From Haplodiscus bocki (Eukaryota), in the NCBI GenBank assembly GCA_965655095.1, contig OZ296653.1, positions 38,564,001 through 38,628,000 of the forward strand: a stretch of 64,000 nt of DNA. The letters are read 5' to 3'. Of this stretch, positions 12,458 to 47,900 are shown in pieces. Position numbers and translations under genes: made by a program. Under the pieces are notes generated by a model. The model was not told the DNA's origin. It saw only the letters and a list, made by a program, of their open reading frames with translations, and did not search any database. Position 1 is the stretch's first letter, and every line of letters starts with the position of its first letter.

Positions 12458-15400
12458 AGGATCTCCGCTCATTTCAGGATGAGTCTGTCATCCGTGGTGC
12501 TGAAGCTGGCGAGCTAAAGGTTTTCCCCTCTGTTCACTTGACGTCCCCGTTGAGAACCTGTCGAGAAATGAGGAAGAGGCGGGAGTGGCGAGTCCGGAGC
12601 GGGTCCGAAAGGAATCTGCTCGCGCTTCAATTATTATATTGGTGCGGTCTTCTTTTGCCATGTGGAGTTGTACGAATTGACGGGGATGATCTTCCGATGC
12701 CTGAAACAATTGCTTCTGTTGATTTTCTTCGTTGCGGTACCCCAGCCCATTGCGATGTGGTGTCTCGCGTCCACCTTCCAAGAGCCTGTGAGCCATGCTT
12801 TTGTGCGAGACTCAGGCTGGGTTGTTGAAACTTCTGGTTTTCTCTCGTGTTAGTAGTTTTGTTTTCTTCTATAATGACTCTACTTTAGCTTTTCTCCCGT
12901 AGATTCCCCTTTGGCATCATTGTATTTTTCATGAGCTAGTTCTAACCGCTCCACATGTTTCTTGAAACTGGCAACATGGGGTTATTCTTTTTCAGTTTTT
13001 CAGTTGATAATTCATCTGGATAGCCTGCTGGTTGTCCGCGATGTGTTCACTGAGCCTTCTGTGTCAGAGTTTGGAGTTGGTGGAACGACCTCTAAAGATG
13101 AGGTGGTATGGCGAGCGACCTCATGTTCATTTTTGATACTTGGTTTTCATCACTTATAAACTAGTTGCTCCGTTGACTTCCAGTCAAGTTTTTGCAACGT
13201 CTTTGCGTATGGATACTGATGAAGGCACGCCGATGAGATCAGGGCGTGAAAATTTTTTGACCGGTGTTGCAAAAGAGAGTCAGGTTCGGAGGAAAAAGTC
13301 GGTTGTAAGAAGACGCTTGGTTCCACCCTCCAAAGGCCTTAACCAGAGAGATCCCCCTGTTCCAGTGCTGATCGAAAGTGAACCCTGCCTGAACAGGCTT
13401 TTCATGAGGGTAAGGCTTCTGTGTATTTGTGGATTTTTTCAGTATTTTCCTTCATTTGAACGTCAATACCTTCTACTTTCTTTTAATAGACCAGTATACT
13501 GCAGATCCTGCCTCTACAATTATCAATGACACCGATCAGCTGCTCGAGTCTTTTTGCTGTTTTTTTATGGAGAGAAGAGTTTGCAGTTACTGGACCCTAT
13601 GATGAGCTCTTAGTATCTTTCCGTATCCACGGAACATCCTGGTTTGAAGTGAAAAATGTTGTTATTTTGTTTTCAGAGTTGAACAAAATTCCAACAGGCG
13701 GGCTGGCTAAGGAGTCAACAGCACTGTCAGGCGTGTCGACAAAATAACAGACACTTTGTCAGATGAGTCAGTCGGGAGCCCCAGGCATCGGGAAGTTTTG
13801 AACAAAAAACAGACAAAAATGACTTATGCCGCTGATGAGCTGGGACGCTTCCTCGTGACTGGTTTAACTGACGCTGCTGGGAAGCCAAATTACTATTACA
13901 GTCTTTTCCACACGGAGGTGTCTGTGCTGACGAGAGGCCAAACGAGATTTCTCAGCATTTTCTGGGCGCTCGTCATTTCTCGGGGGATTATCGCTTGCTG
14001 TTAGAAACTCCTGACTGGTTTTTCCTTCACTTGGACCGGAACTCTCCTTCTGATGAAGAGTTAGGATGAGAGCGGCAGAAGATTTTGCTGGCTCTTTTCG
14101 CCACGTGTGCTTGTGAAAGTGTGTTCAAGGTGACTTTGCTTGTTGACGAGAGTGATGCAACCTATCCAAACCTGACAGTGCTCGCGATGGTGTCTTCCAT
14201 CATGGAAGTCCCTGGCTTGGTGGTCGTTACGAGCTTGTAATGAAGCTCTGGATCCAGTTCATGCTAACTGCCAGCCGAATTGACATTGAGTCGCGAGATG
14301 AAATGCAGGTACTTTCCAGAAATATACGTAGTTTTTTTCAATTTACCCTTGTCTTCATTTGTTCGTGCTTTGGTCAATTATCTTGAATGGGATGTTTGGC
14401 GTTACCCTGCGTCTGGCTATAGGCTGGGTGAATACCAATCAGTACTAGATTAGGGAAATTGAAAAGCAAGATACTCACTCGTGGGTGTTTCTGCGTACGG
14501 GGACCACAACTTTTTGTCCACGTGTGCATGTGTGGCAGATATGGTGAGATTCGTCAGTGATGCAACCGGTGAACTTGGCATCGTTGGTTAGCTTCTTCGT
14601 GCTGTCGATGCAAAAAATCCAGCTGTGTCAGTTCCCTTGTTTCCAGTCTGCTAGAAGAGGTTCATGCGGCTTACATTAGCATTGAACATCTGCAGAAACT
14701 GAGACTTATCCCTGCTCAGTCTTCGTTTTTCTAAAGCACTGCATTTGGAGTTCTTCATCGTCTGTGTTGGGGTTCTTGGATGTTTTCGCCATAACTAATT
14801 TCTTGGTGTCTTTTCTGCCGGGGGCCGAGAGCGGGAATTGGATGATGTCCAGGACTGCCTTGAGACGAGCTGTCATCATCGGAGGGCTGTCAATGACAAC
14901 GCTGCTCGAGGTGGTGGCCTACATCATAGGAGTATGGGCGCTGATCACAACCTACTTGGGAATGATTGGCAAAAGAGGGATGGACACAATCTCATGGTGT
15001 AACATAGAACTTTGTTTTGATTCATTTACGACTGTGGTGTAATTTTCTAGTTTCTCTTTGTTTAGAAGAATGGCGTTGACGGCTACCTTCATATTGATGA
15101 AATGGCTCGCAGGTAACTTCAATGCTTTCATTTGATCTGGGAGATAGGAAATTTGACTTCGGATTTGGTTCATCAGTTTATGTGTAAAACTTGTCTGCTC
15201 TCGGAAATAAGGAAATTTACTTGCATGCTTCTGGTGTCCATACTAGTTTTGTTCGTCCTTTGGGTATTGGTCAAAATATCGGGTTTTTCGTCAATACTCG
15301 GTATTTGCTTTGTACTATCTACCAAGGGATGATGGAAACTAGGAGACTTCATGCAGCCTTCGAAGTCTCGTTCTCATTTTCTCTGCATGAGCCCCACGTG
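12458..15400 (+). pseudogene. Copy of the intron-containing zinc-finger/hAT-like accessory gene (fragment of a - strand element)
   Basis: MTYAADELGRFLVTG...EVSVLTRG (13756-14004); intron 14309-14373 followed by SIILNGM; NWMMSRTALRRAVII...IIGVWALITTYL (14764-15042); homologous to the copies at 28041-32300, 45000-48330 and 58449-61950. Confidence 0.75.
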
Positions 15401-16117
15401 AACTACGAAGTTTCTGTTGCTTTTTCTAGTTTACTCCCAATAAGGTCCGGCGTTATCAGGCACAACTAAGAAAAACTCCGTATCTTTCCGAGTTTCCTCT
15501 TGGTTCTGGCTGGTAGTTCTGGGTCAAAGCAGGAAATTTTCCGTCTCACTCCGAGTTTCTTCATCGTTCAGTTTAGAAGTTTTGTGGAAAAGTGAGATGT
15601 GTTCCTTCCTGAATTGTTCCTCATTTGGTTCTTCGTGATTCAGTCTGCAACAACTTTGTGGAGCTCGTTACAGTGGAACCTGAAAACAACTATCATGAGT
15701 TTGAAGAGCAGTCTCGTTACAAAACCAAAACGATCCTCACGCTGCCCGTGATTGAAAAAACGTAATCCTATATGTTACCCAATCAATCGCCGTTCCCCTC
15801 TCCCAAATGAAAAGCACTTTTTACTTAGAACGCACCTTCTGACAGACTATGAAAAGGTATCCAGCTATTACTAGAAGTCAGAGTTCAAGATTGATTGCCG
15901 TCAGTTCGTCGAAAACTTTGTCCGCAATGTGCTTTCTTCCGTTGCCGCAGGATCCCTCATTGATCAGGGCCTGAATTTTTTCTGCCCTGAGATCATTGCT
16001 GGCGTATATGGGTACTCCACGTACTGCCTGTTTGAACAGCTGCGTAACTGGATTCTTGAGAGGGGCTAGATCCTGCGGTACATCCAACGAAAGCGGCAGT
16101 CCACGGCTCGCACTCAC

Positions 16118-17812
16118 ATATAGTATCAAAACCAGCGGGTAGTAGCTGACACAAAGAGCAGGGATAAACCTGACGACCATCAGTACCAATATTAAACTTC
16201 AAGGATTGGTTGAGTTCAGTATCAAAGTTTTAACCGCTGAAACTTTACGGGTAAAGACTATGGAAGGTCCGACATTTATCTTCCCGTAATTTTTGCATTA
16301 ATTCATTATCGGTTTCAGTAAGCAGAAAAGCGTTGAAGTTTAGCGATATATGCAAGCATCATTTGGTTGAATATGATAACGTGTATCTCAGCTGCGACAT
16401 ATCAATTCTCTTTTTGTGGTAAATTTCAATCAATTTCAGGATTACTGGAGTCGGAACAACATCTTTGTTGTTATACCGCTCAAAAAATCTCAAAACTTTG
16501 GATATTTTCAATTGTCCGTTAATTGATTAAAAAGAGGTGATTTTCAGTAGCAAGTGGAGGTAGATTTTCCACTGTCAACTTGGAGAGTGCTCGTTTTGTT
16601 GAAAACCCTTTTTATCGATTTTTGAATGTCGGGGTTGTGTTTCTCCGGGGGATAACTGTTGCGTATGAGGCCTAAGAAAAAATAACAGGAAGGAAGATTC
16701 TGATTGATTAGCCTCTTGGTAGGATCAAACCACTCGTGAAGGAAATTTACTTTGGTTCTTCTGTTTTAAAGTCCTTGAGTACAAAATCACAACTAGTCGC
16801 TCCACAAACGTGATGCATAATGCGAATTAACTGAATAACACCAAACTTGGAAGAAACAAACTGATTGGCTTTCTTGATGACTCTCAATTCAATAAGAAGC
16901 TCGTTCACCAAAATCGTTGGTATATAGGATGCAAGCAAATTGATTTCAGTGATTGCGATGTTGAATCCGAAGGCTGGTAACACATTAGAATAGCTATCAG
17001 ATTGTTCTGGCAGATCATTTAATTGCTTCCACTGTATTTGCAGGGGATGAGTAGAAACATCTTGTTCCTCCTCAAAATCGGCATTGCATTCTTTCAGAAA
17101 GACGCTAGATCTCTCCTTTAAATTGTGTCTTCGAGCAAGTTGTTCCACAATACCGCTCATTTTTATTTTGATAGCTGTCTTCACTTCAATAAATTCGAGC
17201 TTCACCTGAGTTTTACTTCGCGTAGCTAATCCTTTGTGAGCAGTAATAAATGACGATACGAGGTGATGCTGATCAGAATTGCGCAGAAGAATGGGATTTG
17301 GGATCAAGTTTGGCGAAATGGAATTTTGAATGAGCCTTAGTTTACTAATCTTCTTTGTAATCTCCGTCTCCTTTTACGTTCCATCTTTGACACAGATTCA
17401 AAATCAGAAACGGCCAATTTTACCAATGAGGGGTTCTCCAATTTATAGCGAATATTGAAAGCTTTTAGTTTGTTGCAGACGATTTTTCTCAGTTCGTAAA
17501 ATTTTTGGGTGCAGCAAGTGCTCAAAACAAACCGAGGTTACCAATGCATGATTGTCTGTTATTTCTACCGAACATAAGACAACTGATAATTGGGTTTCTC
17601 AGAAGTGGTTCTGGTAGTACAGAATCTCTACACCCACGGTATAAGTGACTGGCGAAGCAAAAACAATCATGTTTGTAAATTTGTAAGAACTCCATTTGGG
17701 AGTACAGGAAGCTAACTGATTTCTTTTTCTTGTGGCTCCCAAGATCAAATTTTGTACATTGGGTACCACATATCTCGCATGTAACTTTCTCTTTGCGATT
17801 GAATGAAGGTTT
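16118..17812 (-). pseudogene. Maverick/Polinton protein-primed DNA polymerase B remnant (internally deleted, 3'-truncated)
   Basis: LPAFGFNIAITEINL (ExoII-like), VIKKANQFVSSKFG, HEWFD, YNNKDVVPT (ExoIII-like, ~16460), GPSIVFTRK, and IGTDGRQVYPCSLCQ (decayed motif A, DxxSLYP-type). N-terminal KVTCEICGTQ...H zinc-finger-like start near 17790. Confidence 0.85.
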
Positions 17813-19894: not shown

Positions 19895-21580
19895 TGTCAC
19901 AGCATGACTGCGAAGGCTGCGACGAATGTTCCCAACTGAAGATGACAATCCTGGCCCATCAAAAAAATGACTGGAAACTGTAAAGCAATCAAAATACCTA
20001 TATTTTCCAAACTTTCATGATTTTATGAAAAACAATACGTAATATTTATGTATTACTCCATATACTTAACGACATGTAAAAGTCACGTGTCCTATACGAG
20101 CATTTCTGGTGTATTCATACAGATTGGGACGGAATAACCACGAAACGGATGGATTTTCCTTCATTTTCCCTACTCTACGCCCATATCAGTAAAAGGTGCT
20201 GCTTTTATAAATGATTTATTTATTATATGAATGCACGTTTCTGATAACTAGTGCAGTAACTTAAATTACAATTGACTGTGTCAATACGTTTGCTGTAATT
20301 TTCATGATTGTAACCTTAACCTGGAAGTGACTTTAGAAGTCAAGGGTTGCTCCGTAAGTGTTCTGTCGCAACCAATCTGATGACGTCACTAGAAGTTAAT
20401 CTAATCTGCTGTGCTAATATGCTGTGTCTTTTTGGACGAACATGAATTGGTTTTGAAGCCATCGCCTTCATTCTTCGCGGTAACGCTGCGACGAGCGACT
20501 ATCTGGCCGCTCCAGAACTCTCAGTCGAAAACCGGGAACCAGCTGGCAGCAAAAGAGGACGGAGTAGGAAGAAGCATATCCGTGCTCCAAAAGCGATTTT
20601 AATGGGTGCAATGACAGTTTCGGAGCATATTTTTATGCTTTATGATTTTTTAGTGTAGTTGAATTCTTTTTGAAGCATTTTTAGTTATTTTTTTCTCATG
20701 GAAAACCCATTTGATTTTCGTTCAAGTCACTATTCAATGTCCTGACGCAGGAATATGCACTTTTATGTGCATCCATAACGGAAAAGACCCCTACATTTTC
20801 TGTCGAAAGATGGAAAAAACGTGGTTTATGAGAGATGAAACGGACGGTGAGGTTTTTTAGGCAGAGTTGGCATCTCCGTTTGTGAAAGTTTTAATTAAAG
20901 GAATCCTTCTCTATTTTAATTTGAATTGGCGTGTAAACAATCTTGTTTGCCGCCAAGGAAAAGGTAGAAATAGGAGAAAACATAGTACTATTATTATTAT
21001 TATAACAAATTGCAGCCTTCAGTTTTCTGTGCTCTTACCTTTTAAATGTCTGTACGAGTTGAAAACTTTTTCTTCTGTGACAGGAGAAGACATTTTGTTA
21101 AAAAAATCAATCTTTTTTTGAAGATAAAAAATTTTAGTCCAGTCGTCAAAATTTATGAGATTTCCTCCGTTCCGAATTCTAGCAACACTACGGACTCAAC
21201 GAAAATTAACCACGGTCTCGAGAGACACACAAAAGAAGCTCGGAACGGCCGCTCAAAGAACACATTCGTTCCGGAGTTGACTGAAGAGTACATCACCCAA
21301 GTATCGGAGGAAATGGAAGAGAGGATCACTAAAAATGTCCCTGGAATTTAATTGGAAATAGTCACGTATAATGGGTGCTTTGCTGAAGATAGACGATATT
21401 CTTCTGAGCCCGCAAGTACAGACTTGCTCCGGAACCGCTCAGTCAACATCCCGAAGCATCAGCTCAGAAACCGGGAACCGACTAGGGATCGTTCTCCGAT
21501 TGAATCCTATTCTAATGTAGAATTCTGTTTTCGTCCGGTCAGCACTTCAGTTGACTCGAACCGGAAGAAGGCCTCTCACA
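19895..21580 (+). repeat. 5' LTR of element 2
   Basis: TGTCACAGCA...CTCTCACA termini; collinear with 33174-34781. Confidence 0.85.
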
Positions 21581-22770
21581 TAGTGACTAGAATACAAGAA
21601 CAGATTCACTATCGCTCCCCTGGGACTTCATCAGGAAAACAACTGAAGGCGCGTTCCGAAAGTCAGCCACAAATCCGCAGTGGAAGCAAACCTAGGACAA
21701 TTGAAGTAGACCAAATTTGGTTAGCCCTACTGCAACTGGCAACCAACAGCATTTCTGCCAAATTCAATAACAATATCAGAAGTTTCTCGAAACTGGCCAA
21801 ATACCGCACGACGACAAAGCCCAAATTTGACGGAAAATCAGAAAACTTTGAACTATTTGGAGATCTATTCCTAACAAGTCTCAAAATCTACAACCAATTC
21901 ACGGAGAAAAGCAAGATCAACTACTTCCCTTCTCTCATGCACAGTGATGCTCTCCAATTTTTCGAAAACATCATCAGCCTTAACAGAGAGGATTTAGAAA
22001 TAAGGCTGTCTGTGTTTCCTAGGAATTACGTGAAACCGCCAGTCAATGGCGACGGCTAAACAGAAATTCCAAGGACTGGTGTTCAACCTAGCAAAGGAGA
22101 AGGTATTTGATTTTCTGGATGAACTCCAGAAACTAGCAAAGGATGCATTCGGAGTTGCCGCTCAGGCTATCGCCGAGCAATTTGTATATGACCAAATGCT
22201 TCGCAAACTGAAGAAATCTATTAATCAGGCGCATTTGGAAAATGGCACATGTGACCAAATTGTGTCACATCTAGTAAAAAAATTACAACTGGATGGTTCG
22301 GAAGCTACAGATGATCTGCAGAAAATAACTGTGAAGCAGCAAGTCACACAGCAGAATCCAGATAGACGCAAACCAAAATGTCACAATTGGAAAAACCCAA
22401 GTCACCACCGAAACCAGTGTCGTCAAAATAAGCGAGAAAGAAACCATGCCCAAAACGAGAAAAAACAGTGTTGGAAGCACCAATAGAAAAACAGTGGTCA
22501 GAACAAACTCTTACTCCAATAAAAGGCATCCAACAGAACCTTTACAAACAATTCAAATAACTGAAAAGACAGAAAACACCTAACTGTCTACCCACCCTTG
22601 TGGAACCTGTGGTAAAACCAACCATCCCACAGAGAAATGTTACTTTGGAGCAAACGCAGCTAACAGATCACCTCCTCGGTACAAACGACTGGAAGGACAG
22701 CATCGGCCACAACGAAGAGACAACCAGTTGGTCCAAATGACAGTAACCAAGCTGCAGCTTACAAATTAAA
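21206..22770 (+). pseudogene. gag: gag of element 2 (starts inside the LTR)
   Basis: ORFs 21352-22059 (PKFDGKSENFELFGDLF...KINYF) and 22046-22486 (FLDELQKLAKDAFG...EQFV). Decayed knuckle KCHNWKNPSHHRNQC and a second knuckle GTCGKTNHPTEKC near 22602-22640. Confidence 0.85.
21581..21593 (+). promoter_or_regulatory. Degenerate primer-binding site
   Basis: TAGTGACTAGAAT immediately after the LTR-terminal CA; resembles a TGGTG(A/T)CAG(G/A)AGT tRNA-Leu-type PBS (inference). Confidence 0.45.
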
Positions 22771-23172
22771 CTAGCAACGCCACGTCTTTAGTCCGGAGCT
22801 GCATCTGTTAGAACAGCAAAACTTCCATCAATTCTTGAAAATTTCTGGCAGCAAATCTCGGAAACATTTATAAACCGACACAGTTTCAAAAAAAATAATA
22901 CTGATTCGACGGTAAAATAACCTGAAGGATGTTAAATGACGAATGTAGCAAGTCAGACGTCACCATCTAAGTGAATTGAACCACATAACCACGTAGGTGC
23001 CACCGAACAACTTCGTGAAAACTATTGAGAGAACATACCAGTACAGTTGCTCAGCTGCTCCAACACTTGACCTACCGATATCCAGGAATCAAAAAACGAC
23101 AAGCTGACTGCCCTGAATGGAGATACCAGCATTCCCCTTCTCATGATAACAACCCCACTAATTGAGGAATAG

Positions 23173-23620
23173 TTGGTGAGAAATGGACAGACCAATGATC
23201 TGTACCTTCCGCTAACCTCTACGGCGGTCTTGAAACAAAAGCAAGCAACGCTCTACGTGCTTCCTGATGTGGAAAAATATCTAACAATAGACGCCCTGGT
23301 ACACTCAGGAGGCTATTTCGGTGCCTTTCCTCAGGATGAGTTGGGCACCATAAAAAAGAAAGCGCCTTGTATTAATTTCAAAGTCGAAGATCCTCTCACT
23401 TTCCAAAGACAAGTAGCGAATGGCCAGTTAGAAAAACCATTAACAACAGCCACACTTAATTGCGAGATTGGAGACAACACATTTGCTGGCTGAACATTTT
23501 GTTGTAACGGCGAAAATAACAAAGCTAATCATAGGCTTGCACTTTATGAGCAATAATAAAGTGGTCATGGACACAATTTACAGCCTTAACATTTCCCACA
23601 CTTGACGCTGCAATTTAAAA
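23173..23620 (+). pseudogene. Retropepsin (aspartic protease) domain of element 2
   Basis: IDALVHSGGY (decayed D-S-G), QVANGQ flap motif, and IIGLHFM near 23528. Confidence 0.8.
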
Positions 23621-24199
23621 CTGCCTCAGGTGAAGCAACTGCCAAACCCCAACCTTTCCGCAATGACGATGCCCTGACGATACCACCAAGGACAACAAAA
23701 AAATTACAGCCTAGGTCGATCACCCTTCAGAATGGAACAACACAACATGTACTATGACACCATTGGAGAAATTCACGGATATGGCATGTCTGCTGATTTC
23801 ACCTTCAGTGTCAACAATAATTGACGAGCGAGTATCAGTAAACAAAACAACGGAATCACCATACTAATCAAGAAGATTTCACAGTTTGCGGAGTTCTCCG
23901 TAGTCATTCCGGAGCAATCCATGTACCTTAAACCAGCAGACATGGCAATCCTCAGTATGAATCCCCAAGGTGATCCTGATCTGACTGCCTACCTAAACTA
24001 ACTTCTCAGAATCAATAAACCTTAGCAGCAAACAAAACTTTCTAGTTCCCGGCACCTGAAAATCCTGGGAAAATCGAGGACCACACCCGAACATATACAC
24101 GAATCCTCAAAAATTTAACGGAACTGAAAGAGAAACGGAAACTCAACCCACAAAAAAGGGCACAGAGTCTCGGACGAAGTTCTTAGAACGATTTGAGTG

Positions 24200-25100
24200 G
24201 ACTGACAGAGCTCTAACAGAAACAGACAAACAAGCAATTGAAGACATCCTGGTCGACTACCATAACATTTTAGCTGGACAGAAAAGATATTGGGCTGAAC
24301 ACAGAATTCAATATGAAATTAACGCCGACACACGATGAAGCTATATACAGCCAACGCTGGCCAATGCCAATCCACTTGAAACAAGACCTATGTGTTGAAT
24401 TAGCACCGATGCACAAACTCGGAATCATCACGGTACTTCTTTTTTCTAAGTATGCAAGTTTATGATTGCACAGTGGAAACCCAACGGAAAACTACGTCTT
24501 TTTGTGGATCACAGGAAAATCAAGAGTCTCATTACGAAAGACTACACTAACGGCAATCACCCAGTTAGCGTCTCGTCGGACGCAGCACAACACCTTGCAG
24601 GAAAGTCTCTATTCTGCAGGCTAGACTGCTCTCAGGCTTATCACTGTTTGCAGATGGCTGACTAACGTTCAAAGGAAATGCTTGCTATCAATTTTGCTAG
24701 AGGAACTTTTGCCTACAAAAGACTTGCACCAGGTTCAAGCAGATCTGTGTCTGCCTTTTTAAGTTTCAGGCGTGAGTACTGGGATCCACTTGACAAAACT
24801 GACCAAATTGCTCAGTACGTGGACGACATCGGAACTGCAGCTAACAATGCTGCGGACATTACACGGAACATCCAAGCAGTCTTCAAGTGCAATCGCCAAG
24901 CCGGATTGAAACCCACAATAGAGAAGTCCGATTGTGGAGTCAGCCAAGTTGAACCGCTAGGAGAAACAATTTCACCGGAAGCAATCTCACCGCAAGACCT
25001 GAAAATCCACAACTTTCTAGACAAACTAAGTTTCCCCATATCGAAAGAAGCATTACAGTGCTACCTTGCCTTGGATTGGATTTGCGATTTACTACAAAAC
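24200..25100 (+). pseudogene. Reverse transcriptase domain of element 2
   Basis: KPNGKLRLFVDHRKI, FCRLDCSQAYH, FAYKRLAPG and QYVDDIG; premature stops present. Confidence 0.92.
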
Positions 25101-25700
25101 TTATATCCCTAGGATGTCTGAAAAGCTCAACCCAACCTACAAATTACCCACAACTGAGGTGCCAATCAACATCAAGGCAGAGTCGGAAAAAATTTTTCAA
25201 TCAAATAATAAAGCGCTCAGTGATGCTTGCCAACGAGAACTGAAACAACTCAATCCATGGAAGCTACTTATCCCAATGGCGGATGCAATCTTCAGAAGCG
25301 CCAGCTAGGCCCTCATGATAGAAGGTACTCCAGACCAGGAAAAACAGTCAAAACGCTAAACATTTGCCCCCGTGGCGTTCGCATCAAAAATATTCTCACT
25401 TGAGGAACTCAAGATGTCCATCTGGTCAAAAAAACTTTGGCTATTCACATGGCATTTCTTGAGTTTGCACACAAGTTGTGGGACGCAGCGAACCCAATAA
25501 TCGTTCTGACAGATAACAAATCATCCACGCGATTTTTCCAAACGAAAGCAATTCCACCAGCACTATGGAATGCATGTGCTTTTGAGCTGCAAGTCAACTT
25601 CAATATAGCATACATCGCCGATTCAATCATTACTGCAGCTGAATTTCTCTCCAGACTGCAACCCAAAGTTACGAGGAAGATACGTCACAAAGTCCAAAAA
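25100..25700 (+). pseudogene. RNase H domain of element 2
   Basis: MADAIFRSAS (TDAS-like), PVAFASK, IIVLTDNKS and AEFLSR. Confidence 0.85.
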
Positions 25701-26199
25701 GACATTAAGACAACACTTATTGAGTTGACAACAACTCCCTTGGACGTCACAGACCAAGAACAGTTCTTCTTCAATCGAGCAAACAATAAGAATGAGTCAG
25801 AGGAACAAACCCTTGAAAGAAAAGAACAATCTCGACAACATGCGAAGCAATGGGTAGCGAACCAAGAACCATCGTTGTTGAAAACTGGTGTGAAAGAATT
25901 CACTCAAATCGACGGGAACACTACGTCGTTTAACATGAATGGAACCATGGCAAATGTGCAAATACTAAAAGAGCATGGTATTGACCTTTTGTCCAAAAAC
26001 CTGATACTAAAAGTTCTAGGCCAAGCAAATGAGGAAGTGTTAATAACAACCAACCCACGATACAAGCAATACAAAGCAAATGAAGACCGCAAAAATCTTG
26101 AAGTAAACCAAATGTTCAGACAATTTTATGGAAAAACTGGTAGCGTCAAATACTACCAACTTCTCGATTTCCTCAAAAAATTTCAAATTATCAAGCAAT

Positions 26200-27300
26200 T
26201 ATTCAATAAAGTACTGCGGATTTCGCACGGAGAAGTCATGAAGCACCCCGGAAGAACCAAAACAAAATTTATATAGAGGCAACAAAACTTGTACCCAAAT
26301 ATGGCCCATATGATCAAAAATTGGGTCATGTCAGGTGAGCAATGCATCAGAGAATCATGGTTTGATCGCAACACCACTCGCCTTTCCCTGCAAAATAATA
26401 ACGAACACATCACTGAACCAGAAGGCGCCATGCAGGTTGATTTGGTACCGGGAATACCTCCATCTGGTGGAAATGAAAACATAGTGACAGCCATGGGTAT
26501 AATTTTCCACTACTAACTTGATTATCCGATATCCAACCAAGACGCCAAAACACTTGCTAAAATTATCCTTAAGATTATGCCTAAGCATGCCTACCAACCT
26601 ACGACATTCATTTAGAGCAAAGTATCGGCCTTTGTGTCCCAAGTAATAAATAAAGTGGTTGGTTCTCTTCCCATTACTCTAAAGCACGTCACAAAGAAAC
26701 ATGCTCAATCGATTGGTGTGCTTGAACGATCCCACGCGTCAATCAAACAACCTTTGAAGAATAAAACAGATGAACGCAGATAACTGTGGCATTTCTACAA
26801 CAGCAATGCGGTTCAAAAAAGTACTCCTTATCACGCAAGTATTGGCTGTGAGCCAAGCATGGTGTTCCATGGATGCCTTCCTTATTTTGCCTTAGATTCG
26901 TCCACAGCAAGCAACCAATCTTTTATCGCAAACTGCCCAAGATGTTCTTGATCAAACAGAGATGATATGCCAAAATTGTTTGCAAAAAAAATTATGCAGG
27001 CCCACATCGAACATAAAGCTTATAACGACCAAAAGGCCAACACCTCAAAACTCAAACAAACAGATTATGTTAAAAACTCACAGATCATCAAAAGAGTAAA
27101 TTTCCATTTACGGATTTCCGGTTGATTGGGCCGTGCATTATTGAAAAACCGTTAACGAACAACAAATATTTGATACGCAAAATTGTCACAAACAAGACGC
27201 AAGTACTTCATCGTTTGCAGTTGCGTCAGTTCATACCGACAACGTCTACCTGGTGTGCAAATCACGCCACAAGAAGAATAACCTGATCCATAAGTCCGCA
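26200..27300 (+). pseudogene. Integrase domain of element 2
   Basis: HGEVMKHPG...EQC (decayed HHCC), AMQVDLVP, IGVLERSHASIKQ (~26715), and a GPY/F-like IGPCIIEK (~27125). No chromodomain seen. Confidence 0.85.
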
Positions 27301-28040
27301 TTGAACTTGGCAATTTGTAGGTCAGGGCATTGGGATGTGAATGTGAAGAGCCAATTTTCGACTCAGCGTACGATAATGCGGCGCCCCCAGTTCACCCGAA
27401 TTTGCTGTTTGATCTGATCTGTCAATCCAGGAAACAAGGAACACACCAGGAACCTCACGAGGACGCTCCCTAGAGTTGCGGAAACGAGCATGGAACAACC
27501 CAACTATAATCTGACCAACCCCCACTGTTCGAAACACAATTTGTATCATAACCCGAAGCCGAATTGCAATGGCAATTACCGATTTTTATTCATGAACTAA
27601 ACCAGTGTTTTCCCCGGAACGCATACGTAGATGTTTGAAAAATTCCAGGAAAGCGTTACGGAACCAATTTGTAGCAAATCAAAAACTTGTTCTATTTTTT
27701 GTGACTATTCCGTGGCGACTAACTCACTTACTACTCAGTCCTACCAACTTCAAAACAAGGCCTTTGACAACCGATTCAGTTATTCTAGATACGGGCCGAC
27801 TTCAGGTTATTTTATCTTTTCTTATTCTGACTATTCAACTAGAATGGTAAATACAAGAATATCAATGAAGCAAACAGTTTCTCACTGCAGATGACGGAAG
27901 AGCAACGCGAAAATGTGTATATGCAGTAGTTTACTGAAGCGCAAAAAACACTTTCAATTACGGCAACCTCCCATGGAAGACAAACGCGGCTCCTCAGCCT
28001 CGCCCATTTCTACAAAAATTTCCACGGGTAGGCTGGGATG

Positions 28041-31000
28041 CTAAGGCGAAGTCGGATCTTTGACTATGACGCGTTTTCGAGGCGTGACGGAAAGACTGGC
28101 AACCTCAAATTGACGCAGCAGCTTCACAGGTCTGTTGAACAGTTGCTTTTTCCCCTTTCTAGGAGGATAATGTTGTCGGCTTGGACCAGCAACCTTACGG
28201 GAAGGAGCAGCAACGGGCACATAATGAACCTGCCCATCTTCCACGACAGTTGATATGCGGACACCGTGTTTTGAGGAAGATTCATCGGATGAGGGCCTCA
28301 CAGCACCCAGAGCAAACCATTGCTCACTCGTATCTTTGACGATACGACGCCGACCAAGTGCCGTTTCAAAGCACGTCTTCAAATCTGTAATAATCTGGCC
28401 TGACGACTCGCTCTCCACCTTTGACCACGGGGCATACACAGAGCTGCTAATGATGCTATCAGAATAGGCAGCAGCTTCAGACAGCATCGTACCACCCGTT
28501 CCTGACAAGAAATTTAGCAGGGTAAAAAGTGGATCTCTCACAAAAAACTGAATACAGAGCAGGACTCTACGCACTACTTCCTCTCTGATAAGAAACAGCA
28601 GCAGGTTTATTGTGAAACTCTCCCCAAACGTCACTGGCCCACCAAAAGCGATTCCTGTTATATGGAACACCTCAAACAATAAATGAATGAGCCAACAATA
28701 ACAGTGAGACTACATTGTACATGCTTGGAGACAATATGTACTTCATACAGATGGCACTGTACAGAAAACCAGCCTGCGGAGACCAAAAAGTCAGGACTTT
28801 CCCTAGGTCAGGGCAGCTCATTGTTGAATTCCGCTCGAGCTGCCTCTGGTTTTGCGCAAACGACTGGCATTCTGATCAGCGGGCCTCCATCTCAGCGCCC
28901 CTCACCAACCTTTCTCAAGTTGTCTATCAAGTAACAACTTGAACAGCTGCATAGTGGCATGATCTTCACCACTCAAACTCGGAGTGCAGAAACAACTGAA
29001 CCCTTGGCCTATTGGAGACTTGGTGGCAACGGTCGACAAATTGCAGCTCATGAAGTCTTCGAGAAAATTCATGCAGTCCCCCTTGAACTCCTTCTTCAAG
29101 GGGAAGCTCCTGACTTTCTCAAGGGCTACCAGCAAAAGAAACGCTTTTCGTCAATAGCAGCAAACTTCGATTGATTGGGAGCTATGGGCACCTCCCACAG
29201 CTCCACTAACGGCAATACGTTGCTTTTCATAATCTCCTGCAGAAAACAGTAAACAAAATGGGTGACCTCAACAAAAGCGTAGTCCTGATAATCAGCATTA
29301 GATTGAGGATGGACAAAATTGTTGGCAGCTGAAGCAGAACGTTTGTCACAGATATGGAGATCACGTCAATCTCATCGAACGTTTAACACGATGCGTGAAA
29401 CTTACCCGAAAGAAATTGTGCAACCATATTAGTGCGTTACTAGAAATATTTGGAGAAAGCTCCAGAACGCACACGTAACAAAAAACAAAACACCAAATTA
29501 TCTTCATGTACTTACATATTTCAAGTATGTGGGAAAGACGGACCTTCAGGCGAGCGAGTTGATCCTGATAGAAGTATCCATCCATCCATCTTTTTCTTCT
29601 ATTCATCACATATACATTATGCATGGGTACGAGATTGTAGTAATAATCTCAAAAGAATAAAACATTACTACAAGACTATCGCCATCATCTATTCCTCATG
29701 TTTTTTTTCAGGTACAAAAATATCAACGGCCATATTGCCAGATTATTGATCTCGATTTCCAAGAGTACCTTCATGACAAGGCTGCTGGTTACAATGGCTT
29801 TTTTCGGTCCTGGTCGGGAAGCCGTCCAATCGCCACCGTCTGCCCCTTTAGGCCTATTCACAAGAAACTCTTCCATGGAGTGGGGGTCCAGAGATCCAAA
29901 CACACTTGATGCAATCCGTTTTAGGCAGCCCTCAAACCAGCACAATTTAAAGAATCATTTTTCAATTAGCTTCTCTTGATACCCACTGTCTAGATAGCTA
30001 ACAAACGCTTCCACGGGCGCATGTGGACCGCCGTGCATCAAAACCACGCGAACATTGGGACCAAGTGCAGCAATAGCCCGCCCAAATTGCTGCTGAAACA
30101 ACTCAAAATGGTCACACGGACCAGACGAAACTGGCTGTTGTCCCAGCACCGAAGACCCAGATGTGCTCGCCCCGCTCTTCAAACTCAACGCAACAGTAGC
30201 CACGATTCGCAACTCAAGTGAAGACCTCGCTCAAGATAGGGGTACATGCTGTTTAGACTGAATGAGTAAAAAGGAACCAACAGTGGGCAACCGGAATGAT
30301 AACGTGAAACATGGAACAAGTAAAGCACTAGCCAACACTTCATTAAGGGAGCATATCACGTCCACATTGACTCGCCCCACAACTAGAGTGAAATGGGACC
30401 AGAGCTGGTGGACAAGTTCGTAGCTCCCGCTCAAACGTAGTGCCTCGATCAAAACTGAAACCTTTGCGAGTACAGGAAGACTGACGTCAACTGCAACCGA
30501 AATGTCCACCATGAAGTCATCTGAAAAAAGAAAACTTTCTGTCTCTCACCACTTGTGGAGACCTCAAGATCCACTGCCGCTCATTTTCTTTCCCTCTCAT
30601 TGAATTGTTTTCTTAATCAAGCACCCGCCTACCTGGAGTTTCCATACGAAGGCGTTGATATCTCGGAAAGTGCTTGGTGCCCTCATGTAGCGAAACGCAC
30701 ACTTGCTTCATACAGATCAAGCAGTAAAAATTCAGCGGATTCTCTGGATGCGTCTGTTGCCTCAGTCAAGAAGAAGTGGCCCATCTTGTCTACCGCTCAG
30801 CAGTTTTTCATGTTTTAGCTCCGCTTGGAAAGGACTCTTCTCAGCGGATAACTCGTGTACGTCTCGTTGCCGCCAAAAGTCGGTGGTCTCAAATTCGAGC
30901 ATGTGATGATTCCTGCTGCATGCGTTGAACACGACCCAAAAAAACATCTAATCTTTTAGACATTCAAGCATACGATGAACACACGCCAAGGACTATACCT

Positions 31001-32300
31001 GCATGGTACGACGACAATACTTACTGCGTTTTAACGGCACCAGGGTTTGTGGCCTTTCTTCGGCGCAGTTGCACCGGCGAAATGTCACTAATTGATAAAC
31101 TGTTGCATTATTTGGGTTCGTAGCAGGATCGTTACTGAAGTGAAACAACAACCACAAGAAGTGAGAAGCAATCATGAAAGGCTACAGCATTATCCCCAGC
31201 TGAAATGATACCTACCATTATGGAACGCCTCTTCCAACCACTCTCCGCTGCGTTCGTGGCTGACACTGGCAACAGGAACTAGAGCACCACCAGCAAGAGG
31301 GACTAAACTTGTCAGAATAGCAAGCTGGCTTCTGGACTGGCGTCGAGTTTCAACTTCAGTTGGGATGTCATAACCACCAGAAGAAATCATGGCAGCTTCA
31401 CTAACACCTATTCAAATATCAAAAACATAACATCGTCCCAAACGTAGCCAAGACCTTAACAGTATATTGCCACAAACTTGATGCAAAACCCATGGGAGCA
31501 CACTGCAAGGTTGGTTACCTCATCGCTGGATGCCGCACGCCCAACCTCAAACTCGCTTTCGTATCTACCGGAGAACACATGCAAAAGCATCACCCGGGCG
31601 AGCAGCAGGCTCTCCAGAAGAACAAAACACTAAAACACCATAGCCCCATGATACCTTCTTCAGGTTTGATCGTGCGCTGTATACCAGCTAAGTGGAAATA
31701 TGGATAGCCACTTTATTATACCTACGAAGAAAAAGCTAACAAAAATGAAGTATGAAGAATAACACAATGCCAGTTCGAACAAACTGACGATACCCTCTAA
31801 AGTAGTCTCTGAGAGAAAATTGACACGCAATAAAGCATCAGTGAAGTAAACACCTCAGACTGTGGGCCCCCATCCCTCTGCTCACCGCCAGCCACGTCCA
31901 CAAATGTCTCCTGGTCCTCACAGTCTCCATTAAAAACTGGCTCTGTCACACAGCAATGGCTTGGTCTCCCAATTTATCTAGGGCTCTCTGAACGCATTCT
32001 GGTCCCTCTTTTTCCGCTGCATCAAAAATGGGGACAATAGGGAGATCAACAGACAAACTTCTCTGTACAGATGCTTCGTCGATCTCCAATCCTCCTCCAT
32101 CTACAGTACCAACTGGCTCAGCAACGGCGGACGTCCCACCTGCTTCTTCTTCTTCTTTGGAACCCTTTCACTTATTGAACGACGTGGATATCAGTCTATT
32201 ACATCCTGGATTTGGATGTTCAATCACTAAAATTCCTATTCATTCATTTTCAAGCCCGATTAATTTGTCTGCCAGCAAGGACGTCAGCAAGCACTTCCGA
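28041..32300 (-). pseudogene. Antisense multi-exon accessory gene of element 2 (C2H2 zinc finger plus hAT-transposase-like body)
   Basis: FYCLIC...HEGTKHFPRYQRLRMETPG (~30730-30630); intron 30258-30332; GYCCVEFEERGEHIWVF; CLKRIASSVFGSLDP...IWPLIFLYLK; open 212-aa C-terminal frame at 28041-28679. The hAT link is inference. Confidence 0.7.
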
Positions 32301-32699
32301 GGAAACACTGAGGAGCGGTACTCAAGTGCTCCTCAATTTCAATTCGCTATCTTGGGACATGTTTACATCCCGCCAACTTCAGCTTTACGTCCTACCGCCT
32401 AACTTTATCAACTCTTACCAGCAACGCAAGAACATCAAACAAAATCCCGCCTGATGAAACTGAACTATCATTACCCGCAATACTCAAACACTTTTAAAGT
32501 CAATTCCCCATCATCATCATCAGTTGCTATGCTAAACAGACTATTTCTTCAAAGTTTACTAATCAGTTGAAATTCCTCAACATTTAGAGAATGTATCGAC
32601 CAATTTCTCCTGAATCCAACGTTCCGGATTTGTTTTATATGGAGCAATCGTCGGATGAACAAAAAATCAGTTAACAATACCCGGGAGATGATAACATTA

Positions 32700-33255
32700 T
32701 CATCTATTGCATTGCTAGAGCCACAAATTTTACGTTCGACTCTGATTTGAATGAATCAACGATGATCTATGGGTTTGGACGGTAGCTACCAATTAATTCA
32801 ACCTGCTTGAACGATCTGACCAACCCATTTAGTATTTTGGAAACAATGGCAGTAGCACACCCTATAGCAGAAAGTCATTACAAAAATTCCAGCCCCCAGT
32901 CATCGGAGCCGTCGGACATGTCTCTGATATCCACGCCCCCAATGAACCTCAGTATGATCGACGGCGGGAAAACTCTGCATAATATTACAGACGATAACAC
33001 CTGCTATTCGTTGGATAAATCGCGACGGTTCTACTGGAATTCTCCTCTGATTGAGACTTTTGATTGCGAAGGAGAACCAAGCCGAATTTAGCTGCTGTCC
33101 AGTCCACACCCGCCACCTGGCAAAATCAATAGACAATTAGAGATAGGGAGGTGCTTTCCAGAAACAAAGGGAGGGTCGCAGCATGTCTGCAAAGCCTGCG
33201 GAAAAATGCCCTCGCGGAAGAAAATGTTCCTGATCCATAGAAGAGAGACTAAAAA
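32700..33255 (+). pseudogene. Pro/Ser-rich ORF3 of unknown function, overlapping the PPT and the start of the 3' LTR
   Basis: ORF 32807-33091 (SSPQSSEPSDMSLISTPP). After one stop the frame continues PHPPPGKINRQLEIGRCFPETKGGSQHVCKACGKMP; homologues at 48680-49330 and 57470-58100. Confidence 0.55.
33166..33173 (+). promoter_or_regulatory. Polypurine tract of element 2
   Basis: AAAGGGAG directly before the LTR start (G)GTCGCAGCA. Confidence 0.65.
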
Positions 33256-34781
33256 CCCTAAAACTTTACGCATAGGTTTTGGTAGTTCATAATTTTACGT
33301 AAAGAATAAATATTTTTCTCGTATTACTCCGTACATTTATCAAATTACAAAAAACATGTGTCCTATACGTGTAATTTTGGTTAATTGATCCACATTTTGA
33401 CGGAACATCAAATGGATATTTATTTATTTTCCCTACTGTATTCGTATATCATCAAAAGGTGCTGCATTTATAGTTAATATAAATATTGTATAAACCTACA
33501 TCTGGCATAAGTAGTGCAGTAACTCAAATTACGATTGACAGTTTCAAAAATTTTGCTGTATCTATTTTGACTGTAACTTGTGGCAAGATTTTAAACGCAT
33601 GTCGCAACTAGTCTGGTGACGTCACTTGATACTATTCCAATCCGCTGCGCTACTACGCTGTGTGCTTTTGGACAAACACGAAGTGGTTATGTTACCATCA
33701 CTTTAATTTCTCGCGGTAGTGCGGCGACTAACAAAGCTGCAAGCGAATACGTGGCCGTTGCGTAGCGCTTCTACCAGCTGGTAGTAACAAGGAACGGACT
33801 AGCAAAAGGCCTACTCTTGTTACGAAAGGGGGTTTAGTCAAAGCAATAACAATTTCAGAGCATGTGTTTGTAATATGTACTTGTTTCAGGGTACTTTATT
33901 TGTTTTTGATGCATGTTTCAGATCTTCTCCTGTGATGTGAAACGCTTTTGATCTTCGTTTCTTTTAATAATTATTGTGTCGGCGCGGGAATATTCACCTT
34001 GATGTCCCTTTATTGGGAAATAGACCGTACATTTTCGATCGAATGATGGAAAAAACGCGGTTTATGAGGGATAAAATAGGCGGTAACGTGTTTATTTCAC
34101 GCCAGACTTTGCAGTTTACCTGTGTAAAAAATTTGACTAGAGTACTTGTTGCCTATTTGTACCTTGAATTGGCGTGTAAACAATCATGTTACTGTTAATA
34201 TTTAAAAAAACTGCAGCCCGCAATATTCTGTACAATTATCTTTCAACGGTTCGTACAAGCTGAAATTTTTTGGCTCTGAAAGGGGAGACTACACTTTGTT
34301 GAAAATTCAGATTTGATTTAAAGATGAAAAATCTGAATCCAGTTTTCAGAATTGTTGAGATTTTTCCCTCATACGAAGTATAGCAAGGCTACAGAGATAG
34401 CGAAAGTTAACCACGGTCTCGAGAGACACACAAAGGAAGCTCGGAACGGCCGCTCAAAGAACACATTCGTTCCGGAGTTGACTGAAGAGTACATCACCCA
34501 AGTATCGGAGGAAATGGAAGAGAGGATCACTAAAAATGTCCCTGGAATTTAATTGGAAATAGTCACGTATAATGGGTGCTTTGCTGAAGATAGACGATTT
34601 TCTTCTGCGCCCGCAAGTACAGACTTGCTCCGGAACCGCTCAGTCAACATCCCGAAGCATCAACTCAGAAACCGGGAACCGACTAGGGATCGTTCTCCGA
34701 TTGAATCCTATTCTGATGTCGAATTATCTTTTCGTCCGTTCAGCACTTCAGTTGACTCAGACCGGGAGGAGAACTCTCAAT
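33174..34781 (+). repeat. 3' LTR of element 2
   Basis: Collinear with 19895-21580; similarity stops at CTCTCA (~34779). Confidence 0.85.
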
Positions 34782-44999: not shown

Positions 45000-47900
45000 G
45001 ATCTGGCCGGCACGAAAGCCAAGTTGAGAGACACAAAAAGGACAGCATGTGAGTGACCCATAACAGAAAGCTTCCTCGCGGATGGTCGTTCCAGTTGTGT
45101 CTGTTCAAACCTGAAGGAACAAAAATGTGCCCTGGATGGCTCGACAACAGATCTTTTGAACCAACACCTGTTCATAAGCGCTTCAAACAGATGTCCAGAA
45201 AGCTAGAAGTCAGAGTAATCATCCCTACCAAAAAAACTCTAAGAGCAGATAAAACTCAGAACCTGACCGGTGAAGAGACGAAACAGTGGACAAACAGTTT
45301 CGAAGAAGGTTCTCCAGGAACTGACCGGACCTTTACTTGAAAATCCGACTTGAAGTAATAACTGCAGTTTTGGTCAGGTACTGCTAGCACACGAGTGCCT
45401 CCAGGAAAAAGTCGTTTTCAGTTGAGGAAAAAGCGGGAAATTTGAGCAACATGTATGTTTGCCACCTCTTGATATTTGGCGGCGAGCAACTGGCTGAAAA
45501 ACTTTGGAGCAAAGAGTACCCAGAAAATGAAAAATCTCCAAAAGCAGGATTTTTGTAATTTTAGACAATATAGATGAAATAGATATTACGTGTTGCAGAC
45601 TAAAACAAAAAAGAGCCATATGAGTAACAAACCAGGAGTGATGCAAGAACTTTTATAGTTTAACACGGGAATGCCAGATCATACCAGGAATAGGCTTCGA
45701 AAAATACGGAGAAATTCCTAATTTGCCCCGATAAACCTGGACCAAAGGAATCGTAAGCAAGGACTTCTATTAGAATTTTCCTGGTTCACACCAGGTTCAC
45801 CTAGACAGAACGATGAGCAGACAGGGAGCAGTAGTGTAGTTCTCGTAGCATATTTGAGTCAAAGAGGAGAAACATGGTTTAAATAAGGAGTTTTAACGTA
45901 AAGCCCCAAAGTTGACCAGTGCCTAAATGCAGTGAAACCAATATGGGTGGCGGAAACGTCCAAGTAACTCCCGAGACATCTCAAATACGATACGTATCAC
46001 ACATGAACTGATCAGCCAAGCGTTACTTCCACTAACATGTTTGCAAAAACAGTTGGAAGAGAGGAAACTTCATTCGCTCCAACTGATCGCCGTAAATGTA
46101 TTATCATCTTTTCTCTTCCAAAGAGAGAGAATCATTGTTAGAAAGTGGTCCGCAAAAATGAACCTTAAAAAAAGATATACTTTCAAGTCGACCTCTCTTC
46201 CAAATAGGAGACGATCAATGGCCCAACGCCCACAATGTTGGCCACCACCTCGAGCACTCCTGGCAACGACTTGTGTTCAGTGCTCACGGCTTTTCTCAGT
46301 GATCTCCGCTGAAATCAACCAGTACATTTTCTCAGCCTCCTTTAGATGTGCCATCAGGAGCTTGGCCAGAATTAGGGCTTTGAGTGACCAAAACGAAGAC
46401 GTCGACAACTTCTGCATACAACACTTCACGAGACGGAATTTGAACAAGAGGAAATCAAGGAACTTCCTCTGGTTCCCATTGCCAATGTAGGTAGAGTTGA
46501 TCTCGGCAAGCAAATTAGAGTCACCTACAGGGGAAACGACAGGAAAAGTTGCGTCCACAGCACTGACTGAAGATCTGACCCTTGATGATATCGCTGGAAA
46601 ACGTCTACAAAACAGCCACACAGAGAGGCCGGAAAAAATTTTTATGGCAAGTGCACAAAAATACCCACGACTGGAGAACTCGCTCCTCAAACTTGATGCG
46701 GTGGCAGTTATGGGCCTTGATCCAGTCTACAATGTAACGCAGTATGCGAAAATTATCTTATCCGAAAAGGACGTCTAAATAGTAGACAAGCGAGTAAGAA
46801 CAGACATGGAAATACTACGTGCAATTACCTGAACTAAGCAGAATTTCTTCTCGCAACCAGCCAACCTCAGAACCCACTAGACTGGCAGTTAAATGGACTG
46901 CCAACAGCGTCTCCACAAGTCCGTACTGGTCCGTGAACCGAAATATCTCCATCGTCGACGATACCCCCGCCAGCACTAAAAGACTAGGGTTAACGGCATA
47001 ACTGTAGTCAACCAAAAAGTCCTCTGTGAACACACAATCACGATCTCGCTTCACTAGTGAAGTCATAAGGGTCTCATTGCGATGACAACAAAGCTCATCA
47101 GTTGATACCGGGCCGGCCTCAAAATCAAAGATCGGCCAACCAGGAGTCTCCAACCTCACGCATTGCTCCTGCGGGAAATGATGACCACCATGGAAATGCC
47201 GAAGAATCTCGTACGGCCCCTGTGTAAGCACAGGAACATCCCAACGAAATTTTGACAAAAAAATGGCTGTTTTCGACAGCCACATCGGTCAGCCGCACCA
47301 GTTCATCAGTAGCATACGCTCATCATTTTGTAGGTCTTTTTTGCTATAGACCTTTTGTCACCCAGAGCTCCCAACTTACTCATCACTACATGTGTCTGTC
47401 GTCATTTCGACACGTTAGGCAATGCTGACGTCTCCGTTAGTCAGGTTGTCCAGAAATTAACTCAACTCTGTTATCATTACAGAAACATTGTTTATCTCAA
47501 ACCAGGATGCTCCGTATTGAATACGTAAGGATTCTAACAGCTAATGAGGGGATCAAGTGGCTTTGACTTCTGCTCTTCACCAAGATATCTGCACAAAAAC
47601 ACAAGTTACTGACCAGTGACGTGAATTGTAGTGGAGGCAGCATCTGCAGCAATCTGATCTATTGGTCTGTAATATGAAAACAGAGTGCAATGAGAATCGA
47701 GTGAGGAACCACATTGAAAAAACGCAATAATTCAAACAAAGCGTTACCCGCATGGAAAACCTGTTGCAGCAACGTGCAGTCTTGATCAGCACTGGAACAA
47801 GTGGACCTCTACGTCCACACCCTTCGGAAAGTGCAAGCTGGGCGCCTTTTAACAGTAGCGTTTTCTCTCTGGACCTGGCTGTCGCCTTCAATACTTGTTG

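What the first reader, a model, noticed from the sequence alone, without database searches (positions are those of the whole stretch)
28041..32300. Gypsy retrotransposon family carrying an antisense cargo gene that looks like a dead hAT transposase
Seen: a ~4 kb gene on the strand opposite gag-pol, between integrase and PPT. It sits in the same position relative to ORF3, PPT and LTR in three places (28041-32300, 45000-48330, 58449-60870), with two further fragments (12458-15400, 60870-61950), and with two clearly different LTR subtypes. It is therefore an integral, old part of the family. The composite protein reads F(F/Y)CxIC...(I/V)SVLTxGxYEI(L/I)RHxxGxxHF, then (I/V)EFEERGxHxWVFLRT(W), then IIG(V/I)WPLIxxY(L/F). 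Established: many hAT transposases begin with a CxxC...S...G..D...H....H zinc finger, followed by FSIxxDE(S/T)TD...LxIxxR(Y/F) and later a WxxLxxYF helix. Inference: this is a class II transposase captured by a class I element, lacking the catalytic DDE and kept as a DNA-binding factor (integration targeting, LTR regulation or anti-silencing). I know of no described example, but cannot exclude one.
Basis: partly seen in the sequence, partly recalled or inferred. Interest (0 to 1): 0.9.

Follow-up and report, generated by a model that had tools for sequence, protein, structure and literature searches.

The report
Gypsy retrotransposon with spliced antisense gene
A very abundant Gypsy-type jumping gene carries, on the strand opposite its own genes, a real multi-exon gene kept by natural selection; its protein has a zinc finger and a transposase-like core, possibly borrowed from a cut-and-paste (hAT) transposon, but that origin is shown only weakly, by shape and not by sequence.

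Summary
In the window a degraded but complete Ty3/gypsy element (about 20014-34779) carries conserved coding blocks on the minus strand at 27957-31902. They lie between integrase and ORF3/3' LTR. The same gene sits in the same place in copies at 45074-47662 and 59291-60917, with fragments at 13462-16174 and 61086-62006.

Genome-wide there are thousands of copies, including a young element whose LTRs are 99.94% identical.

The gene is real:
- The two introns I measured have GT..AG ends in nearly all copies, and their lengths mostly break the frame.
- dN/dS is 0.09-0.23 in frame, against 1.4-2.5 in shifted frames.
- It diverges in step with pol across subfamilies.
- No terminal inverted repeats flank it.

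The hAT reading is only partly supported:
- Against it: no Pfam hit, no PDB-sequence hit, and hhalign against 70 hAT transposases does not beat a reversed control.
- For it: one exon folds (pLDDT 70-87) as an RNase H-like core. Foldseek's best PDB match is Hermes, below significance. Eight of ten nearest ESM Atlas groups are hAT-derived (TM 0.38-0.53).

No RNA data were available. This scan had already found the same gene on other DNA of this genome (s1-382570, s1-359261, s1-385823). The joined spliced protein and a consensus were left out by rule.

The parts
20014..21578 (+). 5' LTR of element B; its last ~400 nt already encode the start of gag
   Evidence: Self-blastn 20014-21578 vs 33286-34779. 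Gag residues 1-94 match in both LTRs.
21179..22727 (+). gag of element B (degraded)
   Evidence: tblastn with L019 gag, 50-66% identity. The L019 gag carries PF03564.
22939..27585 (+). pol of element B (protease, RT, RNase H, integrase; degraded)
   Evidence: tblastn with L019 pol, about 52% identity. Pfam domains on intact copies.
27957..28679 (-). antisense gene, last exon (exon C; Ser/Pro-rich tail with basic KRKRK-type patch in intact copies)
   Evidence: tblastn 45% identity to L019. 212-aa open frame 28041-28679.
28765..29338 (-). antisense gene, exon B
   Evidence: tblastn 51-60% identity.
29511..29612 (-). antisense gene, small conserved exon between exons Y and B
   Evidence: tblastn 60% identity over 35 aa. 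The same block is conserved in L020 and L022.
29691..30871 (-). antisense gene, exon X (Cx2Cx16Hx5H zinc finger), a ~69-nt intron and exon Y (RNase H-like core); broken by stops and frameshifts here
   Evidence: tblastn 33-51% identity. Fragments listed. Finger conservation. Fold.
31023..31902 (-). antisense gene, upstream conserved coding blocks (5' exons)
   Evidence: tblastn with L019 9029-9888, 38-51% identity.
32603..33208 (+). ORF3 of element B, divergent from the antisense gene's 5' end
   Evidence: tblastn 41% identity to L019 ORF3.
33286..34779 (+). 3' LTR of element B
   Evidence: Self-blastn.
45074..47662 (-). antisense gene of copy C (5'-truncated element), followed by ORF3 48740-49344 (+) and an LTR of another subtype
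   Evidence: tblastn. 157-aa open fragment 46818-47288.
59291..60917 (+). antisense gene of inverted copy D (ORF3 58038-57826 on -, LTR 55874-58529)
   Evidence: tblastn. Inverted repeat with copy C, 83% identity.
61086..62006 (+). further fragment of the antisense gene (exon X tail, exon Y, small exon)
   Evidence: tblastn 34% over 290 aa.
13462..16174 (+). antisense-gene copy A', after the assembly gap; its orientation shows it belongs to an inverted element, not to the pol at 7501-11762
   Evidence: tblastn. N run 12258-12457.

Best explanation
This is a functional accessory gene that belongs to a Ty3/gypsy retrotransposon lineage. It lies between integrase and ORF3 on the opposite strand and has at least eight coding blocks separated by short GT..AG introns. 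Because it is antisense, the element's genomic RNA is not spliced at these sites, so the introns survive every round of reverse transcription. Shown: its position, its introns, purifying selection, and divergence rising together with pol. Inferred: the gene is transcribed from an internal promoter in the short divergent gap next to ORF3 and spliced. It ends at AATAAA/ATTAAA signals about 170-200 nt past its stop. Its product would be a nuclear protein of roughly 1,100 residues. That protein has a conserved Cx2Cx16Hx5H zinc finger, then an RNase H-like core of the DDE-transposase/integrase type. The core lacks the usual acidic residue after strand 4 (conserved S-x-G-G-S-H). A helical region and a basic Ser/Pro-rich tail follow. 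I take it to be a disabled transposase-type protein, most likely of hAT descent (about 55%). It would act in trans as a sequence-specific nucleic-acid binder for the element, regulating LTR or internal-promoter transcription or guiding integration, rather than cutting DNA.
Confidence: 0.6

Rival explanations
1. The antisense gene is a real, selected accessory gene, but its RNase H-like core does not descend from hAT. It could come from another DDE transposase (Mutator/IS256-like, P element/THAP9-like), from an integrase, or from a captured host gene with an RNase H-like fold.
Against: Foldseek, which also uses residue information, ranks Hermes first among 350,542 chains. Eight of ten Atlas rows are hAT-derived, and their alignments of 137-159 residues run past the ~100-residue core. 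The domain order (finger, then linker domain, then core, then helices) resembles hAT.
Confidence: 0.3
2. The minus-strand gene is an unrelated DNA transposon (hAT or other) that inserted several times into Gypsy copies. It would then be a nested insertion rather than part of the element.
For: The genome holds many genuine hAT elements, some with intact 591-641-aa frames.
Against: The position and orientation are the same in every subfamily examined. No terminal inverted repeats bracket it. Its divergence rises with that of pol. Thousands of copies all lie next to pol/ORF3 in the loci read. It gave no hit to hAT Pfam models, and the 150 listed Dimer_Tnp_hAT matches in the genome all score above that family's cut-off.
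Confidence: 0.02
3. The minus-strand frames are not a gene. They would be chance open frames, or the conserved antisense of a cis-acting RNA/DNA region of the retrotransposon.
For: No transcript data were available. No Pfam family matched.
Against: dN/dS is 0.09-0.23 only in the proposed frame, against 1.4-2.5 in the other two. Intron ends are conserved with frame-breaking lengths. Open frames of 495-536 aa occur in young copies. One exon folds confidently.
Confidence: 0.01

Closest known systems
Antisense additional ORFs of plant Tat/Retand-lineage Ty3/gypsy elements (Retand, Grande, RIRE2), most encoding the TRP28 / Transposase_28 domain (PMC11963269)
   Same: An antisense coding region between pol and the 3' LTR. 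It is present in nearly all members of a lineage and is thought to bind DNA and regulate. The pol-to-LTR region is long.
   Different: PMC11963269 reports these as ORFs, and the word 'intron' does not occur in its main text. Here there are at least eight exons with conserved GT..AG introns. No PF04195 or any other Pfam hit was found here. The protein is much longer and has a zinc finger plus an RNase H-like core. The host genome carries animal-type elements such as a Maverick noted by another reader, not a flowering-plant repertoire.
hAT transposases and their domesticated descendants (Hermes; ZMYM1-like/DUF4371, FAM200, ZBED5, ZNF618, ZBED1)
   Same: An N-terminal Cys2His2 finger with BED-like spacing, then an RNase H-like core, then helices. 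These are the best structural neighbours. Loss of canonical catalytic residues is also seen in domesticated hATs (my own knowledge).
   Different: There is no significant sequence or profile similarity. No Dimer_Tnp_hAT domain was detected. There are no terminal inverted repeats. The gene is carried by a retrotransposon, not a host locus or a DNA transposon. The structural scores are sub-threshold.
Antisense genes of complex retroviruses (HTLV-1 HBZ, HTLV-2 APH-2), as summarised in PMC11963269
   Same: An antisense regulatory protein encoded by a reverse-transcribing element. HBZ mRNA is spliced (my own knowledge).
   Different: HBZ is a short bZIP protein transcribed from the 3' LTR. Here the gene starts internally next to ORF3, has many exons and encodes a transposase-like fold.

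Membership tests
hAT superfamily (transposase or domesticated derivative) | Significant sequence or profile similarity to hAT families (zf-BED, DUF4371/RNase-like, Dimer_Tnp_hAT) | tested here: not met
   hmmscan of 10 + 7 ORFs and of 24 family members at E up to 10 gave no hAT family. The PF14291 six-frame search finds 8 places in the genome, not the thousands of gene copies. hhalign of four exon profiles against 70 hAT transposases gave probability 0.3% or less, not above the reversed control. The PDB profile search found 0 hits.
hAT superfamily (transposase or domesticated derivative) | RNase H-like catalytic core | tested here: met
hAT superfamily (transposase or domesticated derivative) | DDE catalytic triad | tested here: inconclusive
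   After strand 4 the conserved residues are S-x-G-G-S-H with no acidic residue. Strand 1 carries conserved glutamates instead of Asp. The third residue lies in exons that could not be modelled. No residue-level structural alignment was available.
hAT superfamily (transposase or domesticated derivative) | All-alpha insertion domain inside the core, and C-terminal hAT dimerisation domain | tested here: inconclusive
   Helices follow the core, but at pLDDT 43-56. Atlas alignments of 137-159 residues to hAT-derived models run into them. Dimer_Tnp_hAT was not detected in exon B by Pfam or hhalign.
hAT superfamily (transposase or domesticated derivative) | BED-type zinc finger at the N-terminus | tested here: inconclusive
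   The Cx2Cx16Hx5H ligands are conserved in 80-91% of 247 copies. Pfam zf-BED is not matched; there is only a weak zf-C2H2_ZN292 hit at E 0.14-0.16.
hAT superfamily (transposase or domesticated derivative) | Own terminal inverted repeats and 8-bp target-site duplications | tested here: not met
   No inverted-repeat pair brackets the gene in the intact element L019. Target-site duplications were not searched for. This is expected for a captured gene, and it excludes a nested hAT element.
Ty3/gypsy LTR retrotransposon (the carrier) | LTRs flanking gag, protease, RT, RNase H and integrase in that order | tested here: met
   On intact copies: RVT_1, RT_RNaseH, RT_RNaseH_2, Integrase_H2C2 and rve on one 1574-aa pol, an aspartyl protease, and a DUF1759 gag. 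LTR pairs.
Plant Retand-type antisense aORF (TRP28) | Antisense ORF between pol and the 3' LTR | tested here: met
Plant Retand-type antisense aORF (TRP28) | Transposase_28 (PF04195) domain | tested here: not met
   No Pfam hit on any antisense ORF.

The most novel reading that the evidence does not exclude
A class I element (Ty3/gypsy) has captured a class II (hAT) transposase gene, complete with spliceosomal introns that are protected by its antisense orientation. It has kept the gene for a long time as a catalytically disabled, sequence-specific helper for its own transcription or integration targeting. That would be a domestication of one transposon's protein by another transposon rather than by the host.
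Probability: 0.4. Interest if true: 0.85.

Novelty: new variant of a known kind. Interest (0 to 1): 0.68.

Why it matters
Antisense accessory ORFs are known in plant Retand/Grande/RIRE2 elements and in HTLV. A multi-exon, selection-maintained antisense gene with a transposase-type fold in a highly successful Gypsy lineage would be a much more complex retrotransposon genome than usual.

It shows a simple way for a reverse-transcribing element to keep introns: place the gene on the other strand. If the hAT link holds, it would also be a case of one mobile element domesticating another's protein.

It has a practical side. Gene finders will call thousands of copies of this gene as host genes with introns. 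The family makes up a visible share of a 1.5-Gb genome. Young copies with near-identical LTRs offer a system to test what such a protein does for retrotransposition.

Tried and rejected
- Pfam on window fragments and on intact ORFs gave nothing relevant.
- The profile search of PDB sequences gave nothing.
- The ESM Atlas feature search on exon Y and on exon B gave no usable hit.
- The AlphaFold model of the natural 495-aa frame with 24 sequences had pLDDT 37 and was unusable.
- By eye I saw hAT-like motifs: IVSIIGGS against vtDnasn, ETRDWMS against TRWNS, and VLSTVASRSVIGQGLS against the C-terminal SERxFS block. hhalign did not support any of them, so I do not count them.
- RNA evidence: the look-up of sequencing runs returned four runs of one study, none on record as RNA. 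Their contigs cover the element in fragments and show no joints at the intron positions. Expression and splicing remain untested.
- Search for named relatives: three searches of 5.8 billion proteins and one of 1.84 billion representatives found only unnamed ENA gene calls. The four contigs I traced all come from one assembly, ERZ26859043. Full-length annotated proteins longer than about 1,144 residues were outside the length window.
- The nested DNA-transposon and chance-ORF readings are rejected.
- Three literature searches found no description of such a gene.

Full report
**What is in the window**

The window comes from a 1.5-Gb eukaryotic genome with twelve chromosome-sized contigs. It is a pile of degraded Ty3/gypsy copies. 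I mapped it by tblastn with the proteins of an intact relative, L019.

One complete but dead element spans about 20014-34779:
- 5' LTR, about 20014-21578
- gag, 21179-22727 (+)
- pol, 22939-27585 (+)
- conserved coding blocks on the minus strand at 27957-28679, 28765-29338, 29511-29612, 29691-30871 and 31023-31902
- ORF3, 32603-33208 (+)
- 3' LTR, 33286-34779

The same minus-strand gene, in the same place relative to ORF3 and the LTR, is at 45074-47662. An inverted copy is at 59291-60917. Fragments lie at 61086-62006 and 13462-16174.

The LTRs of the first element and of the other two copies are almost unrelated. The gene copies match only at protein level. All window copies are broken by stops and frameshifts.

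**It is part of the element, and it is a gene**

The genome holds thousands of copies: 4325, 6458 and 3806 first-look candidates for three different exon queries.

In every locus I read, covering four subfamilies, the gene lies antisense between integrase and ORF3. Between those subfamilies pol is 52-76% identical.

Identity of the antisense gene falls together with that of pol. Pol is 76, 70 and 52% identical for L022, L020 and the window copy; the first antisense frame is 54, 58 and 43%.

One element, L019, has 1772-nt LTRs that differ at one base. Its gag, pol and ORF3 are open, and so are the three antisense frames called on it. No inverted repeats bracket the gene, so it is not a nested DNA transposon.

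Two introns were measured across copies:
- Intron X/Y begins GT and ends AG in 52 of 53 copies. It is 66-72 nt long, usually 67 or 68.
- Intron B/C has GT in 28 of 30 and AG in 30 of 30. It is 76-79 nt long.

Most of these lengths break the frame, yet the exons on both sides are conserved. That requires splicing.

Pairwise dN/dS at 8-30% nucleotide divergence is 0.16, 0.13, 0.09 and 0.23 for the four exons tested. The same alignments read in the two shifted frames give 1.4-2.5. Very young pairs approach 0.4-0.7, as expected if changes after insertion are neutral.

At least eight coding blocks are conserved between subfamilies. That agrees with the eight or nine exons reported by earlier follow-ups of this scan on other DNA.

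**What the protein looks like**

Exon X carries a Cx2Cx16Hx5H finger. Its four ligands are kept in 80-91% of 247 copies, decayed ones included.

Exon Y was folded alone with 51 natural sequences. It gives pLDDT 70-87 over residues 11-100, with the order helix, three strands, helix, strand, helix. That is an RNase H-like core.
- After strand 4 the conserved residues are S-x-G-G-S-H, without the acidic residue that DDE enzymes have there.
- Strand 1 has conserved glutamates.

The rest of exon Y is helical at low confidence. The last exon is Ser/Pro-rich with a KRKRK-type basic patch, which suggests a nuclear protein; this is inference.

**Is it hAT?**

By sequence, no evidence:
- Pfam gave nothing on 17 frames, nor on 24 family members at E up to 10.
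- A profile search of all PDB sequences was empty.
- The DUF4371 model finds eight places in the genome, not thousands.
- hhalign of four exon profiles against an alignment of 70 diverse hAT transposases gave probabilities of 0.3% or less. Scores were no higher than against the reversed alignment.
- Motif resemblances I saw by eye were not recovered by hhalign.

By shape, some evidence:
- Foldseek ranks Hermes first among 350,542 PDB chains, but at E 0.012 and probability 0.75. ISCth4, Mos1 and integrases follow.
- In the ESM Atlas shape search, eight of ten family rows are hAT-derived: ZMYM1-like/DUF4371, ZNF618, FAM200/ZBED5 and ZBED1 RNase-like. TM by query is 0.38-0.53 over 109-156 aligned residues, which is borderline. 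The two transposase rows that are not hAT are Mutator and DDE_Tnp_1.

I conclude that a transposase-type RNase H-like core is likely (about 80%). hAT is the best single candidate for its origin (about 55%). Membership is not demonstrated.

This sits between two earlier follow-ups of this scan. One found no support for hAT (s1-359261). The other reported a hAT-like fold (s1-385823).

**How it most likely works**

Shown: gene structure, selection, and inheritance together with the element.

Inferred:
- An internal promoter lies in the short gap where the gene's 5' end faces ORF3.
- The transcript is spliced, and polyadenylated at ATTAAA/AATAAA signals 173 and 200 nt after the stop.
- The nuclear zinc-finger protein uses a disabled transposase core to bind the element's own DNA or RNA. 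It would regulate transcription or guide integration, in the way proposed for plant antisense ORFs and HTLV HBZ (PMC11963269).

The antisense orientation explains why the introns persist: the sense genomic RNA does not present them as splice sites.

**Limits**

- No RNA run was available. The four runs that hold the element behave as DNA contigs and show no splice joints.
- All database relatives are unnamed gene calls from ENA. The four contigs I traced all come from one assembly. Distribution in other species is therefore unknown.
All searches and folds used natural frames by reference.
- The organism was not identified here.

**Novelty**

Antisense ORFs between pol and the 3' LTR are known in plant Retand, Grande and RIRE2 elements, mostly with the TRP28 domain. 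Three full-text searches found no report of an intron-rich antisense gene with a transposase-like fold in a Gypsy element. I class it as a new variant of a known kind.

Noticed in passing
window 21179-21457 and 34415-34664; L019 5728-6198 and 19717-20104: The first ~95-130 codons of gag lie inside the LTR, so every 3' LTR carries a stray gag start frame (a 156-aa ORF in L019). From my own knowledge this recalls Ty1, where TYA starts in the LTR.
   Followed up: partly
L014 1850-2010 (between pol stop and the antisense gene's 3' end); L019 13545-13597 and 7309-7473: Short tandem repeats containing the palindrome CACGTG (E-box-like, e.g. CTACGTGCGCGCCACGTG) sit in the convergent gap between pol and the antisense gene, and again near ORF3/LTR. 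They could be binding sites.
   Followed up: no
window 12258-12457: A 200-N assembly gap separates the pol of one element (7501-11762, +) from an antisense-gene copy on the same strand (13462-16174, +). That order is impossible within one element, so the gap joins two elements in opposite orientation, or it is a misjoin.
   Followed up: partly
window 52565-54185 and 54181-55804: A 1.6-kb tandem duplication (80% identity) lies between the two inverted LTR/antisense-gene copies (48115-50918 against 58653-55874, 76% identity).
   Followed up: no
G000, e.g. C1:51727663, C2:47708364, C3:32845236: More than twenty Dimer_Tnp_hAT matches have identical scores and sit in 624-aa open frames. This suggests a very young, probably active hAT family in the same genome. 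Other hAT families have 591- and 637-641-aa frames.
   Followed up: no
L019 18479-20104: The gag of this Gypsy-type element (RT_RNaseH, Integrase_H2C2) carries PF03564 (DUF1759), a domain I know mainly from BEL/Pao elements.
   Followed up: no
L014 7124-7846; window 32603-33208: ORF3 (240 aa, sense strand, Ser/Pro-rich) is conserved across subfamilies at 41-58% identity. It lies head to head with the antisense gene, so the two may share a bidirectional internal promoter. It has no Pfam hit.
   Followed up: partly
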